Of a stretch of 64,000 nucleotides of DNA, positions 33,563-40,233 are shown one piece after another. The DNA lies in the IMG/VR virus record IMGVR_UViG_3300044640_001495, positions 1 to 64,000 of that record; one strand, written 5' to 3'. The notes beneath the pieces were generated by a model. That model was not told where the DNA came from and ran no database searches. It saw nothing but the letters and a program-made list of their open reading frames with translations. Position 1 is the stretch's first letter, and the number at the start of each line of letters is the position of its first letter. The position numbers were made by a program, and so were the translations under genes.

Positions 33563-33591
33563 TTGACATTCTGTCAGAAAGGTAGTATAAT
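33563..33591 (+). promoter_or_regulatory. sigma70-type promoter
   Basis: TTGACA-N17-TATAAT. Confidence 0.88.
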
Positions 33592-34555: not shown

Positions 34556-36457
34556 ATGTCTAAGATCATCGGTATCGATTTAGGTACCACAAACTCATGT
34601 GTAGCTGTTATTGAAAACGGCATCCCCAAAGTAATTGAAAATGCAGAAGGTGCTAGAACAACACCTTCAATCGTTGCCTACGGCAAAGATGAAATTCTCG
34701 TAGGTGCTTCAGCAAAACGTCAATCAGTTACTAACCCCAAAAATACAATCTATGCTTCAAAGCGTTTGATTGGACGCAAGTTTAAAGAGGAAGCTGTTCA
34801 AAAGGACATCAACCTTATGCCCTACGAAATCATGGAAGCCAAGAATGGCGATGCATGGGTTCGTGCTAATGGTCAAGAGTTGGCGCCTCCACAAATCTCA
34901 GCAGAAGTTTTGCGTAAGATGAAAAAGACAGCGGAGGATTATCTAGGTCATGAAGTTACTCAAGCAGTTATCACAGTTCCTGCGTACTTTAACGACAGCC
35001 AAAGACAAGCTACTAAAGACGCTGGACAAATCGCAGGCCTGGAGGTACTCCGTATTATTAACGAGCCTACTGCGGCAGCTCTTGCTTATGGCGTTGATAA
35101 AGCTGATAAAAGAGATAGGAAAATTGCTGTTTACGATCTTGGTGGCGGTACATTCGATGTTTCGATCATCGAAATAGCCAACGTAGATGGAGACAAGCAG
35201 ATCGAAGTATTGAGCACAAACGGCGATACATTCCTTGGCGGTGAAGACTTTGACCAACGTATTATGGATTACTTGGTTGAAGAATTCCGCAAGGATCAAG
35301 GTGTTGATCTAACCAAAGATGTACTTGCTCTACAGCGTTTAAAAGAATCTGCTGAGAAGGCAAAAATTGAATTGTCTAGCTCTGCAAGCACAAGTGTTAA
35401 TTTGCCATACATCACAGCAGACGCAAGTGGCCCTAAGCACATGAATATCACTATTAGCCGTAGCAAGTTAGAACAGCTTGTTGACGAGTTAATCACTCGC
35501 TCAATTGAGCCATGTAAAGTTGCCATGAAAGATGCAGGTGTCACAGCCGCTGACATCGATGAAGTTATTCTTGTTGGTGGTATGACACGTATGCCAAAGG
35601 TACAAGAAGCCGTTGAAAAATTATTTGGCAAGGCACCACGTAAGGATGTTAATCCAGACGAAGCTGTTGCCGCAGGTGCCGCAGTACAAGGTGCTGTTCT
35701 CGGTGGCGATCGTACTGATGTGTTGTTGCTAGATGTGACTCCACTGAGTTTGGGTATTGAAACAATGGGCGGTGTGTTTGCAAAGGTTATTCAAAAGAAC
35801 ACAACCATTCCGACTAAGGGACAGCAGACATTCTCAACAGCAGAAGACAATCAACCTGCGGTGACTATCAAGGTATTCCAAGGTGAGCGTGATCTAGTAC
35901 AATACAACAAATTGCTAGGTGAATTCAATCTTGAAGGTATTCAACCGCAACGTCGTGGACAGCCGCAAATCGAAGTTACATTTGATATTGATGCTAACGG
36001 TATCATGAATATCTCGGCCAAGGACAAGAGCACAGGCAAAGAAAACAAGATCACTATTAAATCAGATAGCGGTCTAAGCAAAGAAGAAATTGAACGCATG
36101 GTACGTGAAGCTGAAGAAAATGCAGAGAGTGATCAAAAAGCTCGAACATTAATTGATGCTCGCAACCAAGCTGAAGCAACTGTACATGAAGTTAAAAAAG
36201 ATCTTGAAGAATTTAAAGATGAATTAACTGATACAGAAAAGACAGAAATCGAGACAGCAGTTAAATCAGTCGAAGACGCTATGAAAGAAGATGACGCTGA
36301 TAAAATTAAAGCTGAACTCGAAAAAGTTTTTCCGGCAATGAAAACATTGTTGGAGAAAAAGCAGGCCAAGGAACAGGCAGCTCAGGCGCCTCAACCAGAA
36401 GCCAAAGCAGATGACAATGTGGTAGACGCTACGTTTACAGAAACTAAGTCTAGCTAA
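34556..36457 (+). CDS. dnaK: Hsp70 chaperone DnaK
   Basis: [26 protein letters not shown] and VTFDIDANG motifs. Confidence 0.98.
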
Positions 36458-36513
36458 TTGTCTTGGGGGCACCTTCGGGGTCCCCATTGTTCTTACTTTA
36501 TAAGGAGACTATT

Positions 36514-36960
36514 ATGAACAATAACGCATTACAAAGAATTGAAGCTATTAATAGAGCACTGATTGGTTTTGACACCATGTTCGACCAAATGGAACGTAGA
36601 TTTTCCAACAGTGTGTCCAACAACTATCCTCCGCACAATATACTCAAGACTGGTGAGAATCAGTATGAGATTCAAATTGCTGTGACAGGATTTGAAAAAT
36701 CGGAAATTTCCGTAACTGTAGAAGCTAATGTGCTTACAGTAAAAGGCGAAGGAGCAGAATCTGTTCGCCATGAGAATCCGGAAATTGTTTACTTGCATCG
36801 TGGTCTAGCCACCCGCGACTTTGTTCGTGAGTTTCCACTTGCTGAACACATGGAAGTTGCAGGTGCAGAAATCCGCAATGGCATGCTGATTGTGAAATTG
36901 ATCCGCAATATTCCCGAGTCTGAAAAGCCACGTGTGATTGACATTGTGGAAGTTAAATAA
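36514..36960 (+). CDS. ibpA: small heat-shock protein (Hsp20/IbpA-like)
   Basis: NYPPHNI, AVTGF, YLHRGLA.R.F and NGML motifs; AAGGAG RBS places the start at 36514. Confidence 0.9.
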   Translation: MNNNALQRIEAINRALIGFDTMFDQMERRFSNSVSNNYPPHNILKTGENQYEIQIAVTGFEKSEISVTVEANVLTVKGEGAESVRHENPEIVYLHRGLATRDFVREFPLAEHMEVAGAEIRNGMLIVKLIRNIPESEKPRVIDIVEVK

Positions 36961-37001: not shown

Positions 37002-37304
37002 ATGACCACTGAAATTCAAATAGAAGAAAAAATTATAACAAGTTTACAGCCACCTAAAATGTGGAAAGTAATCGTGCTCAACGATGAAAAGACTCCTATG
37101 GAGTTTGTGATAGAATTGTTAACTGACATATTTAAACACAGTGTAAGTGCAGCCAAAGATATCACTCTGGAAATACATAATTCTGGCAGTGCTGTGGCAG
37201 GAGTCTACACTCATGAGATTGCCGAGACCAAAGGCATAGAATCAACTCAACTGGCTCGAAGTAATGGGTTTCCATTGCGCATCACACTAGAACAAGAAGA
37301 ATGA
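37002..37304 (+). CDS. clpS: ClpS N-end-rule adaptor
   Basis: PKMWKVIVLNDEKTPMEFV, EIHNSG.AVAG.Y..EIAETK and FPLR. Confidence 0.92.
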   Translation: MTTEIQIEEKIITSLQPPKMWKVIVLNDEKTPMEFVIELLTDIFKHSVSAAKDITLEIHNSGSAVAGVYTHEIAETKGIESTQLARSNGFPLRITLEQEE

Positions 37305-37561
37305 CCTTTGACGATGTGCGATTAATCAAACATCAATTTACAGGGGCACGTAGATTCGGTTATTGGGTTCATTTTAGAGATCAGCGTCCCAGTTCTCAAG
37401 CCAGTGGCAAGTCCGGCAAACTAAGTATAATACGATTTGTAGAATCAGCTTTTGGTCCATTGGGAACACGTTGGCAGTATCAAAGATTCAATGTCAACGA
37501 TTATATTCTCAAGCTCAACAGTGAACAGGATCTTGTGATGCTGATACTACGTTTCAGATAA
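37301..37561 (+). CDS. hypothetical protein (member of the short paralog family)
   Basis: C-terminal LNSEQDLVMLILRF. Confidence 0.6.
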   Translation: MTFDDVRLIKHQFTGARRFGYWVHFRDQRPSSQASGKSGKLSIIRFVESAFGPLGTRWQYQRFNVNDYILKLNSEQDLVMLILRFR

Positions 37562-37574
37562 TTACGGAGTCATA

Positions 37575-38126
37575 ATGAGCCTAAGAGAATTAACCAAAGA
37601 CAATCACACCAATGCAGAAAGACAGGAGTTTGTAAAAATACTGTTTTCAGGAACCATAGATCCCAAACTGTACGCTACATATCTCTACAATCAATTTCCT
37701 ATGTATGAGCTGTTAGAAGTATGTGCCATGCCGCATGGACTGCTGTCTGACATGCCAGGAATCTTACGGGCCAAGGCCATTAGAGCTGACTTTGAGGAAT
37801 TATGGGGATCAGACGAAGAAGATAGACCCAAAATGTGTGCAGTGGTAAAAGAGTATATGGATCATATTATGAAAATTAAAGATGATCCTAAATTGCTAAT
37901 GGCACACCTTTATGTACGACACATGGGCGATCTAGCTGGCGGACAAATGATTGCCAAAAAGGTGCCCGGGGCTGGCAAGTACTATCAATTTGAAGATGCC
38001 GATAGTCTAAAAGCAGCAGTTCGTTTAAAAATCGACGACAGCATGGCCGACGAAGCAAAAGTCTGTTTTGATTTTGCTACACAATTTTTTAAAGAGATGA
38101 TGGAAATTGCAAACATCAACAAGTAA
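37575..38126 (+). CDS. hemO: heme oxygenase
   Basis: LRELTKDNH.NAE (proximal His) and AHLYVRHMGDLAGGQ. Confidence 0.92.
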   Translation: MSLRELTKDNHTNAERQEFVKILFSGTIDPKLYATYLYNQFPMYELLEVCAMPHGLLSDMPGILRAKAIRADFEELWGSDEEDRPKMCAVVKEYMDHIMKIKDDPKLLMAHLYVRHMGDLAGGQMIAKKVPGAGKYYQFEDADSLKAAVRLKIDDSMADEAKVCFDFATQFFKEMMEIANINK

Positions 38127-38799
38127 AGTCTGGCAAACACTCATTGAAGTGCAAGAGCTGTTTATTGAACAGTTCAACAAAACCGGAAAGGAAGTATATG
38201 AAACGGGTATGGATCGCTTCAACAGCCCTGGTTGGGTTAATCGTGTTTGGACCAGTAGCAGTTATCGTAGGGCTCACGTTGATGTTGTGGATGCTAGAGA
38301 AACCAAAGGACTCTGGATGATGCACTGTTGCATCTTCCCGCATACACATAATCCTGCACCGATCTTTGGATTCGATGTAATTGCAGGCAAGAACAAGATC
38401 ACCGGGTGTTTCTATGATTACTCAGCTGCCGGCGATAAAGAACATGCTATGATGGATTGGTTTGCAGAAGAAGCACAAAAGCTAGAGTGGAATAAAACTC
38501 GCAAACTGCCAGATTGGGCAGAACGTATCTTTAGCCCTAGTATGGTAGCTGCTGGGAACGTTAGCGATGAAGAAGAACTAGCACAGATTATTGCCATGGC
38601 AAAAGAGGGCATACAGCACTATTTGAGCACGGTAGCAGAAACCAATAATACAGCTAACGATACTACAGAGGCACAGAACTACTACTGCGAAAATCAAAAG
38701 CAGAACCCGCATACACCACGTGTAATGGTTAGTTTAGGGCTTTCAGAAGAGGACGTTAAACATTTTATTCAAGAATGCCTGTTCCCTGAAATCAGCTAA
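38107..38799 (+). CDS. pcyX: ferredoxin-dependent bilin reductase, PcyX/PcyA type
   Basis: HVDVV (Asp where PcyA has Glu76), MMHCCIFP, PIFGFDV, LPDWA..IFS and QNPHT. Confidence 0.8.
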   Translation: MQTSTSKVWQTLIEVQELFIEQFNKTGKEVYETGMDRFNSPGWVNRVWTSSSYRRAHVDVVDARETKGLWMMHCCIFPHTHNPAPIFGFDVIAGKNKITGCFYDYSAAGDKEHAMMDWFAEEAQKLEWNKTRKLPDWAERIFSPSMVAAGNVSDEEELAQIIAMAKEGIQHYLSTVAETNNTANDTTEAQNYYCENQKQNPHTPRVMVSLGLSEEDVKHFIQECLFPEIS

Positions 38800-38808
38800 A
38801 TATTAGCT

Positions 38809-40233
38809 ATGAGAGCATTTGAAATAATTACAGAATCAGAAGGCGGGATTATCCGTCGTGCCCAAGAGGTTAGTCAGGGCAAAACTATCACGTTTGCTAA
38901 AGATGGTAAAAAAATTAACCTAGTTAGCACAACAGTTATTCCTGAAACTGAATTGAGATATGAAGTTCAAACTGATCTCGAACAAGGTTTAAAAGATGCT
39001 CTTGCAGCACTGGGCAATCCCACAGTATATTATTACAGTAAAGTGCAGGGAAAATCCGGAGCAGCATTAATTACCCTATGGGAAGACGAAAACAAGAAAT
39101 CAATTGCGTTCGTTAAATTTACTAATACAAAAAAAGCCGGAGCATTTCCAATTGCATGGACAAATGCAGATTTTGGAAGAGATACTGGCTACACACAAAC
39201 TGATAATAAAATTGCAGAACGTGCGCAGTTTGATATTAAACCCAACAAGTTGTTTGCTACAGACATTGATATTCCTGTTGCAACACTGCCTAAGCAGATT
39301 AAACAAAAAGAAGATCTATCTCCAGAGATTAATCAACAGATTAGTCAACTGTTGACAAATGTACTAACCAACTCAACAACTCCAGTTCCGGGTGCTGATC
39401 AATATATGACAACCTATGAAGTTGATCTTGGTGAAAGTGCAGCACCAATTGCACTAGTCACCGGTAATTTTGTCACCGGTAGTTATAGAGAAGCTGAAGC
39501 AGCATTATTAACTCCTATTGGGCTAACTTGGAACGGTATTAAATCTGTACTGTTTCCAGGCGGTGGATCAAATTTATTATACGACAGTTATCTAAGACTG
39601 AACAAAACTACTTCTTTAAAAGTAAGTAGCAAAGATAAAAAAGGTGGTGCTGCTGCCGCAGTCACAGGGCTATTAAAAGATATTCAAGAAAATCCAGAAC
39701 GTTTTTCAGAAGTCACAGACAAGCCCAACTATCAAGAGATTTTAAAAATTATTAACGTAATTGCATCTAACTCTGCAATTACAGGTCCATTAGAATTAGC
39801 AGTAAAATTTGGCTTTATTGACAGTACTGATGCGGCCAATGTCCAACAGAATTTAGGCCAGGCAATTAAATATAATCCGCAACTACCGTGGGCAACTACT
39901 CCCGGAGTACAGTCGGCATTTAAAAGAAAAGGTGCAAAGTTTGAAGACCCTGCATATGATATGGGATATCACGCATTGGCAGGTATCGCTGAACTAGTAG
40001 CAGATCATTTGAACAAGATGCCAGGTATGAGCGATTTCTTTAAAGCCGTACTTGAGAGATCAACAATGATCCAGGTAAAATCTAGAATTGCCAAAGGTAG
40101 TGGTGGCGCATTCTTTAACTCTTTCCAGGTCATTTATCCGCCAGTGTTCGACGGCATTATCAAAGTGGTCGCTGGCAACAACTACATGTCTACTCGTAGA
40201 CCAGTTGGCAAAATTAGTTTTAAAATCCCCTAA
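38809..40233 (+). CDS. large hypothetical protein, possibly capsid-internal; possible PD-(D/E)XK-like core
   Basis: MRAFEIITE N-terminus; YDSYL...KVSSK segment. Confidence 0.55.
   Translation: MRAFEIITESEGGIIRRAQEVSQGKTITFAKDGKKINLVSTTVIPETELRYEVQTDLEQGLKDALAALGNPTVYYYSKVQGKSGAALITLWEDENKKSIAFVKFTNTKKAGAFPIAWTNADFGRDTGYTQTDNKIAERAQFDIKPNKLFATDIDIPVATLPKQIKQKEDLSPEINQQISQLLTNVLTNSTTPVPGADQYMTTYEVDLGESAAPIALVTGNFVTGSYREAEAALLTPIGLTWNGIKSVLFPGGGSNLLYDSYLRLNKTTSLKVSSKDKKGGAAAAVTGLLKDIQENPERFSEVTDKPNYQEILKIINVIASNSAITGPLELAVKFGFIDSTDAANVQQNLGQAIKYNPQLPWATTPGVQSAFKRKGAKFEDPAYDMGYHALAGIAELVADHLNKMPGMSDFFKAVLERSTMIQVKSRIAKGSGGAFFNSFQVIYPPVFDGIIKVVAGNNYMSTRRPVGKISFKIP

What the first reader, a model, noticed from the sequence alone, without database searches (positions are those of the whole stretch)
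37575..38799. Heme oxygenase plus PcyX-type bilin reductase in a phage with no photosynthesis genes in view
Seen: overlapping hemO and FDBR genes. The reductase has Asp59-His73-Asp90 (spacing 14 and 17) and an NPH motif. Established, as I recall: PcyX has Asp55/His69/Asp86, makes phycoerythrobilin from biliverdin and occurs with HemO in phages inferred to infect non-cyanobacterial hosts, whereas PcyA has Glu76/His88/Asp105. The role of these bilins in infection is unknown, and no bilin-binding protein is evident in this window.
Basis: partly seen in the sequence, partly recalled or inferred. Interest (0 to 1): 0.65.

Follow-up and report, generated by a model that had tools for sequence, protein, structure and literature searches.

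The report
Phage heme-to-pink-bilin gene pair
A 353-kb lake-water phage carries the known two-gene viral cassette (heme oxygenase plus PcyX reductase) that should turn host heme into the pink pigment phycoerythrobilin; the cassette is a known kind, and why a phage of a non-photosynthetic host makes this pigment is still unknown.

Summary
hemO (37575-38126) and an FDBR gene (38107-38799) overlap by 20 nt on the + strand. The reductase is a genuine PcyX:
- Its best solved-structure match is PcyX 5OWG (E 4.6e-70), against about 1e-16 for PcyA.
- It has Asp59/His73/Asp90 and N-P-H.
- It falls inside a strongly supported PcyX clade.
- The PcyX Asp is present in 173/173 PcyX-like sequences and is Glu in 76/76 PcyA.

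Both genes are under purifying selection (dN/dS 0.10 and 0.16). Relatives appear in freshwater RNA libraries.

The genome is a 353-kb, distantly T4-like jumbo phage from lake water. It has no psbA/psbD, phycobiliprotein, GAF, globin, CpeS/T or plant-type ferredoxin. It does have a 5-aminolevulinate synthase elsewhere on the contig.

The cassette, including its occurrence with alaS and in large freshwater phages, is already published, so this is a new member of a known kind. New details:
- A large freshwater clade (386 IMG/VR loci) keeps the true PcyX signature.
- Its cassette always follows a DnaK-Hsp20-ClpS block.
- No neighbouring gene is a conserved partner.

The product (PEB) and the physiological role remain untested.

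The parts
37575..38126 (+). hemO: canonical (HO-1 type) heme oxygenase, 183 aa
   Evidence: Pfam PF01126 at 8.3e-25. Best PDB match is Synechocystis HO-1 1WE1 at 1.6e-16, with the proximal His11 and the distal helix G118-D119-L-A-G122-G123-Q124 aligned. These residues are invariant in 25 freshwater homologues. dN/dS 0.16.
38107..38799 (+). pcyX: ferredoxin-dependent bilin reductase of the PcyX type, 230 aa, TTG start
   Evidence: PF05996 at 3.9e-19. PDB 5OWG PcyX_EBK42635 at 4.6e-70 against PcyA 2D1E at 4.2e-16. Asp59/His73/Asp90, the V61-D62 insertion, Met71 and N200-P201-H202-T203-P204 are shared with all PcyX and differ from all PcyA. Placed in the PcyX clade, SH-aLRT 99. dN/dS 0.10.
38107..38126 (+). 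20-nt overlap of the hemO 3' end with the pcyX start (probable translational coupling)
   Evidence: An overlap of 8-23 nt is seen in nearly all freshwater loci and of 14-23 nt in most marine loci. Mosig overlaps by 14 nt.
33563..33591 (+). Perfect sigma-70 consensus promoter-like site (TTGACA-17-TATAAT) ahead of the gene block
   Evidence: 12 of 12 matches. The total number of promoter-like sites in the region (26) does not exceed the shuffled expectation (22.4). No convincing + strand terminator before 40755. This is a consensus match only, not evidence of function.
34556..36457 (+). dnaK (Hsp70), part of the conserved upstream block
   Evidence: Present in 75 of 80 related loci. HSP70 called in identical contigs.
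36463..36960 (+). hsp20 small heat-shock protein (other callers start it later, giving 148 aa)
   Evidence: PF00011 at 5.1e-16. Present in 74 of 80 loci. 148-aa call in identical contigs.
37002..37304 (+). clpS, Clp protease N-degron adaptor; directly precedes hemO in most relatives
   Evidence: PF02617 at 5.3e-28. Present in 76 of 80 loci, and at position -2 relative to pcyX in 66 loci.
37301..37561 (+). 86-aa ORF of unknown function between clpS and hemO; not a conserved partner
   Evidence: No family hit. Found in only 10 of 80 loci, all near-identical.
38809..40233 (+). 474-aa ORF in a variable slot after pcyX; unknown function, no bilin-binding fold found
   Evidence: No Pfam, PHROG or NCBIfam hit. 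Found in 16 of 80 loci; the slot is filled by unrelated families elsewhere. dN/dS 0.42. AF2 model pLDDT 83 with no PDB match. One RNA-library contig joins 38807 to 40262, skipping the gene.

Best explanation
This is a functional viral hemO-pcyX cassette.

Inferred mechanism:
- The heme oxygenase opens host heme to biliverdin IX-alpha, releasing iron and CO.
- PcyX, made from an overlapping reading frame and so in step with HemO, takes four electrons from a host ferredoxin, because the phage encodes none.
- It reduces biliverdin through 15,16-dihydrobiliverdin to phycoerythrobilin, using Asp59, His73 and Asp90.

Shown here: both genes are intact, conserved, under purifying selection and tightly packed behind dnaK-hsp20-clpS in a 353-kb freshwater, distantly T4-like phage that has no photosynthesis or bilin-binding genes.

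Inferred from characterised relatives: the two reactions, the electron donor and the product.

Physiological role: I take the most likely role to be control of heme, iron and tetrapyrrole turnover in the infected cell rather than light harvesting. This is the least certain part (about 0.35).
For: Family and catalytic motifs.

The PcyX-specific Asp is present in 87/87 freshwater, 81/81 marine and 5/5 MAG-contig sequences, and is Glu in 76/76 PcyA.

Published work ties Asp at this position to PEB rather than PCB. A freshwater phage enzyme lacking it makes PCB.

Tree: PcyX clade SH-aLRT 99, window inside a freshwater subclade at 97.

dN/dS: pcyX 0.10, hemO 0.16, against dnaK 0.09.

hemO-pcyX are adjacent in 80/80 loci and the overlap is conserved.

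Contigs from four freshwater RNA libraries cover hsp20, clpS, hemO and part of pcyX at 90-99% identity.

No Fer2 ferredoxin in the genome. No psbA/D, phycobiliprotein, GAF, globin or CpeS/T.

alaS is present in the same genome.
Against: No enzyme of this freshwater subclade has been assayed. It is only 55% identical to the crystallised marine PcyX.

The only freshwater phage FDBR tested so far was a PcyA, though it lacks the Asp.

Contigs in RNA libraries do not prove transcription.

The role is unsupported by any direct datum. A phage alaS that pushes tetrapyrrole synthesis sits oddly with simple heme destruction for iron. The strict conservation of product-determining residues hints that PEB itself matters, yet no acceptor was found.

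Family searches of the genome use a fast first look and Pfam models only, so divergent bilin binders or unusual ferredoxins could be missed.
Confidence: 0.75

Rival explanations
1. The reductase is functionally a PcyA and makes phycocyanobilin, as the freshwater phage CB_2 'PcyA/X' does.
For: The one freshwater phage FDBR that has been characterised is a true PcyA. JGI annotates the homologues as phycocyanobilin:ferredoxin oxidoreductase. NCBIfam's PcyA model hits at 95 bits, below its cut-off of 206.
Against: Glu76, which PcyA needs for 18-vinyl reduction, is Asp here and in all 173 PcyX-like sequences. The authors explain CB_2's activity by the absence of this Asp. The score to PcyX is 239 bits against 62 bits to PcyA. 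The protein lies in the PcyX clade, not with the alpha-proteobacterial or cyanobacterial PcyA.
Confidence: 0.07
2. PEB is made as a ligand or chromophore for a bilin-binding protein of the host, or for an unrecognised phage protein. That would mean a sensory or regulatory function rather than metabolic housekeeping.
For: The product-determining residues are invariant and pcyX is as constrained as dnaK. Bilin-binding globins (BBAGs) exist in heterotrophic bacteria and have been proposed as possible partners. alaS in the genome would feed the pathway towards its end product.
Against: The 353-kb genome has no GAF, phycobiliprotein, globin, CpeS or CpeT. Neither flanking unknown ORF is conserved with the cassette. 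The 474-aa neighbour shows no bilin-binding fold. The host is unknown, so no host partner can be named.
Confidence: 0.2
3. The pair serves only to free iron from host heme. PcyX just removes biliverdin so that the oxygenase keeps turning over, and the identity of the bilin is irrelevant.
For: An iron-supply role has been discussed for these cassettes in nutrient-poor waters. The cassette lies beside clpS and chaperones, which would fit turnover of host proteins, hemoproteins included. A FecR-like gene is nearby.
Against: If any biliverdin sink would do, the strict retention of PcyX-specific residues over a deep clade is unexplained. alaS raises tetrapyrrole synthesis, which costs iron rather than yielding it. 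alaS is, however, only in 2 of 4 large relatives.
Confidence: 0.25
4. The genes are decaying passengers with no function, or the contig is cellular rather than phage DNA.
For: HemO is short (183 aa; Pfam match to profile positions 6-145 of 204). pcyX uses a TTG start.
Against: dN/dS is 0.10-0.16 with all catalytic residues invariant. Short HemO is the norm in this family (Mosig's is 188 aa). Both ORFs are intact. The record is an IMG/VR virus, 98% complete by CheckV, with TerL, neck and sheath-stabiliser homologues, 23 tRNAs and a tmRNA. No relative above 54% identity was found in 185,579 species genomes, and those at 50-54% are on phage-like MAG contigs.
Confidence: 0.03

Closest known systems
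PcyX (PEB synthase of the FDBR 'AX' clade) with PhiHemO, from marine phage metagenomes; structure 5OWG (EBK42635)
   Same: Full-length alignment at about 55% identity. Same Asp/His/Asp set, same Pro at the PcyA-Asp220 position, same 2-residue insertion after the Asp. hemO lies directly upstream and overlaps. Phage-borne.
   Different: This copy belongs to a separate freshwater subclade, roughly 50% identical to the marine one. It sits in a 353-kb genome, behind dnaK-hsp20-clpS rather than before the neck genes. Its activity has not been measured.
Pelagibacter phage Mosig EXVC030M hemO/'pcyA' pair (MT647606), the closest cultured phage
   Same: hemO 47% and pcyX 52% identical, with overlapping genes. 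Distantly homologous T4-type TerL (31%), neck and sheath-stabiliser genes. Homologous 2OG-Fe(II) oxygenases in the genome.
   Different: Mosig is 141 kb, marine and infects SAR11. Its cassette lies between 2OG-Fe(II) oxygenases/ferrochelatase and the neck genes. The window's genome has no ferrochelatase, is 2.5 times larger and comes from lakes.
hemO-pcyA/X-alaS cassettes of aquatic phages (Wegner et al. 2024, PMC11480375) and the large freshwater phages of Chen et al. 2020 (ho1 + pcyX-like + ALAS)
   Same: Same three gene families in one phage genome, in the 'broken cassette' form. Freshwater origin and large genome.
   Different: The characterised freshwater enzyme (CB_2) lacks the Asp and makes PCB, whereas this clade keeps the Asp. 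alaS here is about 308 kb away in contig coordinates, not 'nearby'. No pmoC in this genome.
PcyA (phycocyanobilin:ferredoxin oxidoreductase) of cyanobacteria, cyanophages and alpha-proteobacteria
   Same: Same fold family. His and Asp equivalent to His88/Asp105. Four-electron reduction of biliverdin.
   Different: 21-33% identity. PcyA has Glu76, no 2-residue insertion, Ile/Val for Met71, and N-D-K-T-R instead of N-P-H-T-P. Its product is PCB.
PebS (cyanophage PEB synthase)
   Same: Same predicted overall reaction, carried out by one phage-borne polypeptide.
   Different: Belongs to a different FDBR lineage (PebA/PebS/PUBS) and was not detected by sequence search with this protein. Occurs in cyanophages, whose hosts use PEB in antennae.

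Membership tests
PcyX (FDBR, AX clade) | Ferredoxin-dependent bilin reductase domain | tested here: met
   PF05996 at 69.6 bits (cut-off 31), residues 43-227. PHROG 7278 at 1.9e-25.
PcyX (FDBR, AX clade) | Closer to characterised PcyX than to any PcyA | tested here: met
   5OWG PcyX_EBK42635 at 239 bits, E 4.6e-70, residues 7-230. Best PcyA (2D1E) at 62.5 bits.
PcyX (FDBR, AX clade) | Asp at the position of PcyA Glu76 (PcyX Asp55) | tested here: met
   Asp59 here. Asp in 173/173 PcyX-like rows and Glu in 76/76 PcyA rows. The significance is stated.
PcyX (FDBR, AX clade) | His and Asp equivalent to PcyA His88 and Asp105, with spacing 14 and 17 | tested here: met
   His73 and Asp90 are invariant in all 250 aligned FDBRs. 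The spacing matches Asp72/His86/Asp103 of EBK42635.
PcyX (FDBR, AX clade) | Pro at the position of PcyA Asp220 (the N-P-H motif) | tested here: met
   Pro201, present in all PcyX-like rows; Asp in PcyA. Table 2 of PMC13446030 lists Pro216 for PcyX.
PcyX (FDBR, AX clade) | Phylogenetic placement inside the phage PcyX clade | tested here: met
   PcyX clade SH-aLRT 99. Alpha-proteobacterial PcyA lies next to it and cyanobacterial PcyA forms the outgroup. EBK42635 itself could not be included because no reference sequence was available.
PcyX (FDBR, AX clade) | Two-gene cassette with hemO on a phage genome | tested here: met
   Adjacent in 80/80 loci and overlapping. Virus record with TerL, neck, tRNAs and tmRNA.
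PcyX (FDBR, AX clade) | Converts biliverdin IX-alpha to phycoerythrobilin via 15,16-DHBV with ferredoxin | not testable with these tools
   Needs an enzyme assay. Predicted from the residue signature only.
PcyA | Glu76 (needed for 18-vinyl reduction) and the N-D-K-T-R motif | tested here: not met
   Asp59 replaces Glu and N-P-H-T-P replaces N-D-K-T-R. NCBIfam PcyA equivalog scores 95 bits against a cut-off of 206.
Canonical heme oxygenase (HO-1 type, PF01126) | Domain match, proximal His ligand and distal-helix GDLxGGQ | tested here: met
   88.2 bits against a cut-off of 23. His11 and G118-D119-L-A-G122-G123-Q124 align to Synechocystis HO-1 and are invariant in 25 homologues.
Canonical heme oxygenase (HO-1 type, PF01126) | Alpha-regiospecific cleavage giving biliverdin IX-alpha | not testable with these tools
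   Shown for marine and CB_2 phage HemO, not for this protein.
Viral three-gene tetrapyrrole cassette (hemO, pcyA/X, alaS) | 5-aminolevulinate synthase in the same phage genome | tested here: met
   410-aa ORF at G000:345347-346579 (-). TIGR01821 at 570 bits (cut-off 338.55). PDB ALAS at 8e-131.
Viral three-gene tetrapyrrole cassette (hemO, pcyA/X, alaS) | alaS contiguous with, or close to, hemO-pcyX | tested here: not met
   About 308 kb apart on the linear contig, or about 45 kb if the ends are joined. alaS is found in only 2 of 4 large relatives.

The most novel reading that the evidence does not exclude
In this lineage of 335-353-kb phages, found both in lakes and in marine or saline MAG contigs, hemO-pcyX is fixed directly behind dnaK-hsp20-clpS. 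This could mean that the bilin pathway is part of a phage stress and proteolysis programme. For example, it might dispose of heme released as host hemoproteins are degraded. Alternatively, PEB or biliverdin depletion might act as a signal on a host heme or bilin sensor in heterotrophic bacteria. That would be a non-photosynthetic, regulatory use of a 'light-harvesting' pigment.
Probability: 0.15. Interest if true: 0.75.

Novelty: new member of a known kind. Interest (0 to 1): 0.38.

Why it matters
PcyX is one of the few enzymes known only from viruses, and its purpose in phages of non-photosynthetic hosts is openly called enigmatic.

This case adds a very abundant freshwater clade that keeps the full PEB-determining signature. 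The literature states that PcyX has so far been seen only in marine viruses, and the one freshwater enzyme tested turned out to be a PcyA.

It also supplies constraints that any functional hypothesis must meet:
- no phage-encoded ferredoxin or bilin acceptor;
- no conserved neighbouring partner;
- selection on pcyX as strong as on dnaK;
- a fixed position behind a chaperone/ClpS block;
- alaS as an optional companion.

It does not answer what the pigment is for.

Tried and rejected
1. HemO-PcyX complex prediction (paired 25-row alignments): no verdict, score 0.02 against a mark of 0.32. This is not evidence either way.

2. The 474-aa downstream ORF as a hidden bilin binder or lyase:
- No family hit.
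- The Atlas gives virus-only hypothetical clusters.
- AF2 model pLDDT 83, but Foldseek E >= 0.2 and VIA-align Z <= 4.0.
- Only weak restriction/homing-endonuclease-like rows appear.
- Rejected as a partner because it is present in 16 of 80 loci and evolves fast.

3. The 86-aa ORF as a partner: present only in near-identical contigs.

4. Close relatives in bacterial genomes: none with the single-protein scan. The profile scan found phage-like MAG contigs, one divergent Shewanella gene and true PcyAs.

5. Methanotroph host: no pmoC.

6. 'Moraphage' identity (PMC12619734): that paper does not mention heme or bilin genes and places its phages apart from T4-like phages. No link was shown.

7. Host identification via 'relatives' is not available for virus records. 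The DnaK sweeps give only a class-level lean.

8. The costly representative-protein search was not used, because the word search and family scans left nothing open.

9. EBK42635, CB_2 and Bradyrhizobium PcyA could not be put into the tree because no reference sequence was available, and I did not type sequences.

Full report
**1. The observation.** The window has two + strand ORFs at exactly the stated coordinates. One runs 37575-38126 (183 aa). The other runs 38107-38799 (230 aa, TTG start), and they overlap by 20 nt.
- Pfam assigns them to Heme_oxygenase (8.3e-25) and Fe_bilin_red (3.9e-19), both well above the curated cut-offs. PHROGs agrees.
- In the pcyX frame a TGA sits at 38098-38100. 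TTG at 38107 is therefore the only start that preserves the N-terminal residues that align with the PcyX crystal sequence. The overlap is real.

**2. Which reductase it is.**
- Solved structures: the best match is PcyX_EBK42635 (5OWG), E 4.6e-70 and 239 bits over residues 7-230. The best PcyA (2D1E) scores 62.5 bits.
They comprise 87 freshwater relatives, 81 marine relatives including the cultured pelagimyophage Mosig, 5 MAG contigs, 66 cyanobacterial PcyA, 3 cyanophage PcyA, 7 alpha-proteobacterial PcyA and one Shewanella sequence.
- Asp59: it is Asp in 173/173 PcyX-like rows and Glu in 76/76 PcyA rows.
- Other markers: a Val-Asp insertion two residues later, Met71 and the N-P-H-T-P motif partition in the same way. 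His73 and Asp90 are invariant everywhere.
- Published meaning of these positions: PcyA Glu76 is needed for 18-vinyl reduction. PcyX has Asp there and makes PEB. Pro replaces PcyA Asp220. A freshwater phage 'PcyA/X' that lacks the Asp is a true PCB-forming PcyA.
- Tree: a maximum-likelihood tree of 74 thinned rows puts the window in a freshwater subclade (SH-aLRT 97) of a PcyX clade (99). Alpha-proteobacterial PcyA lies next to it and cyanobacterial PcyA forms the outgroup. This reproduces the published 'AX' topology.

The PcyX call is therefore well supported at sequence level. The product itself is untested.

**3. The oxygenase.** HemO aligns to Synechocystis HO-1 with the proximal histidine (His11) and the distal-helix GDLxGGQ motif in place. 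These residues are invariant in 25 freshwater homologues. Its short length is normal for this viral family (Mosig's is 188 aa).

**4. Are the genes in use?**
- Selection: against freshwater relatives, dN/dS is 0.10 for pcyX and 0.16 for hemO, compared with 0.09 for dnaK and 0.42 for the variable gene downstream. dS is near saturation, so the ratios are approximate.
- RNA libraries: contigs from four freshwater metatranscriptome runs, each from a different study, cover hsp20, clpS, hemO and part of pcyX at 90-99% identity. This is presence in RNA libraries, not proof of transcription.

**5. The genome.**
- The window is the first 64 kb of a single 353,123-bp IMG/VR virus record, 98% complete by CheckV.
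- The window holds 23 tRNAs and a permuted tmRNA. The genome has distant T4-type TerL (31% to Mosig), neck and sheath-stabiliser genes.
- Eighteen DNA runs labelled 'lake water metagenome', each listed under its own study code, hold at least 94% of the locus. Thirteen of them are flagged as possible sources of this DNA. This is a freshwater jumbo phage.
- Whole-genome family searches found no Photo_RC, Phycobilisome, GAF, Globin, CpeT, CpeS, plant-type ferredoxin, ferrochelatase or pmoC.
- They did find a 5-aminolevulinate synthase at 345347-346579 (TIGR01821 at 570 bits). alaS is in 2 of 4 large relatives, so it is an optional companion.

**6. Context across relatives.**
- IMG/VR holds 386 loci of the freshwater type and 194 of the Mosig type.
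- In 80 freshwater loci hemO and pcyX are always adjacent. The upstream order exoribonuclease, MazG, DnaK, Hsp20, ClpS is kept in most of them.
- The gene after pcyX is a variable slot filled by several unrelated families. One RNA-library contig lacks it altogether.
- Four MAG contigs, one of 335 kb, share the Hsp20-ClpS-hemO-pcyX order. Two others have the Mosig order, hemO-pcyX-neck.
- The stop/start overlap is conserved in both the freshwater and marine groups.
- No conserved neighbour can serve as a candidate bilin acceptor. The 474-aa neighbour gave a confident model with no match to any solved fold.

**7. Host.** The host is not identified.
- The phage DnaK is 72-73% identical at best to genomes of the GTDB class that contains Shewanella, which by GTDB convention (my knowledge) is Gammaproteobacteria including the former Betaproteobacteria. 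The best values are 64-67% in Alphaproteobacteria and 54% to Synechococcus.
- The tmRNA scores best with the betaproteobacterial model.
- A CsgF/CsgG curli module points to a Gram-negative host.
- AlaS is a Shemin-pathway enzyme, typical of Alphaproteobacteria.
- Together these make a cyanobacterial host unlikely but do not name one.

**8. How it most likely works.**
- Shown: intact, conserved, co-oriented, overlapping genes with the right catalytic residues, and no phage ferredoxin.
- Inferred from characterised relatives: heme is cleaved to biliverdin IX-alpha, which is then reduced to PEB by four ferredoxin-derived electrons via 15,16-DHBV.
- Role: the literature offers iron supply or an unknown bilin acceptor and calls the matter enigmatic. 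The fixed position behind chaperones and ClpS, and the optional alaS, lead me to favour a role in heme, iron and tetrapyrrole homeostasis of the infected cell.
- Against a purely housekeeping role: the strict retention of PEB-determining residues keeps a ligand role alive.

**9. Comparison and novelty.** The cassette was described in marine phage metagenomes. The 2024 paper treats hemO-pcyX as previously identified and cites its references 6 and 16 for it. From my own knowledge these are Ledermann et al. 2016 and 2018. They were not readable here.
- The cassette is present in the cultured pelagimyophage Mosig.
- It has been reported together with alaS in marine and freshwater phage contigs.
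- It has been noted as 'pcyX-like' in large freshwater phages.

This is a new member of a known kind. The modest additions are these:
- A very abundant freshwater clade keeps the genuine PcyX signature. The literature says PcyX has so far been seen only in marine viruses.
- The cassette has a second, conserved genomic setting in 335-353-kb phages.
- The genome-wide search for acceptors and for a ferredoxin was negative.
Noticed in passing
window:24880-25318 (+): Phage-encoded permuted (two-piece type) tmRNA. Rfam tmRNA_permuted scores 120 bits. Within the tmRNA clan the betaproteobacterial model scores best (102 bits, above gathering).
   Followed up: partly
window:58125-62198 (+): Array of 23 tRNA genes covering most amino acids.
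   Followed up: no
window:33322-33558 (+): Phage-encoded ribosomal protein bS21 (PF01165, 2.9e-19), conserved in 67 of 80 related loci and in the marine MAG contigs.
   Followed up: partly
window:40305-45785 (+): Curli-type secretion block: CsgF, CsgG with a C-terminal SH3 domain, a weak curlin-repeat protein (19.9 bits, just under the Pfam cut-off of 20.7), a FecR-domain protein and an F5/8 type C domain protein. It is conserved downstream of the variable slot in about half of the related loci.
   Followed up: partly
window:38809-40233 (+): 474-aa protein in a hypervariable slot after pcyX. It belongs to a virus-only family and gives a confident AF2 model (pLDDT 83) with no solved-structure match. 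Weak, repeated resemblance of residues ~180-474 to PD-(D/E)XK restriction/homing endonucleases, from both fold and Atlas leads. dN/dS 0.42.
   Followed up: yes
window:23113-24411 (+): Two tandem 2OG-Fe(II) oxygenase genes, 35-37% identical to those that flank hemO in pelagimyophage Mosig. Here they lie 13 kb from the cassette.
   Followed up: no
L002:1468-2700 (-) = G000:345347-346579, outside the window: Viral 5-aminolevulinate synthase (TIGR01821, 570 bits), flanked by an ADP-heptose-epimerase-like gene and a collagen-like repeat protein. Present in 2 of 4 large related phage records.
   Followed up: yes
L178:360-1130 (+), Shewanella surugensis DSM 17177 contig: A cultured gammaproteobacterium carries a long-branch FDBR that groups with the PcyX clade (34% identity) but has Asn at the Asp59 position. 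It sits next to IS91 and DDE transposase genes, and no hemO was found on the 3.6-kb contig. PcyX is described as confined to phages.
   Followed up: partly
L172-L177 (MAG contigs labelled Anaerolineales, Verrucomicrobiales, Halobacteroidaceae, Coraliomargarita, Neomarinimicrobiota, Rickettsiales): Six MAGs assigned to five different phyla (two to Verrucomicrobiota) hold phage-type hemO-pcyX with phage synteny, so these are probably mis-binned phage contigs. One (L176) is a 335-kb contig that looks like a marine counterpart of this jumbo phage.
   Followed up: partly
window:31555-32949 (+): 464-aa predicted membrane protein with a sub-threshold tetraspanin-like match, conserved in 71 of 80 related loci and in the marine MAG contigs. 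Function unknown.
   Followed up: no
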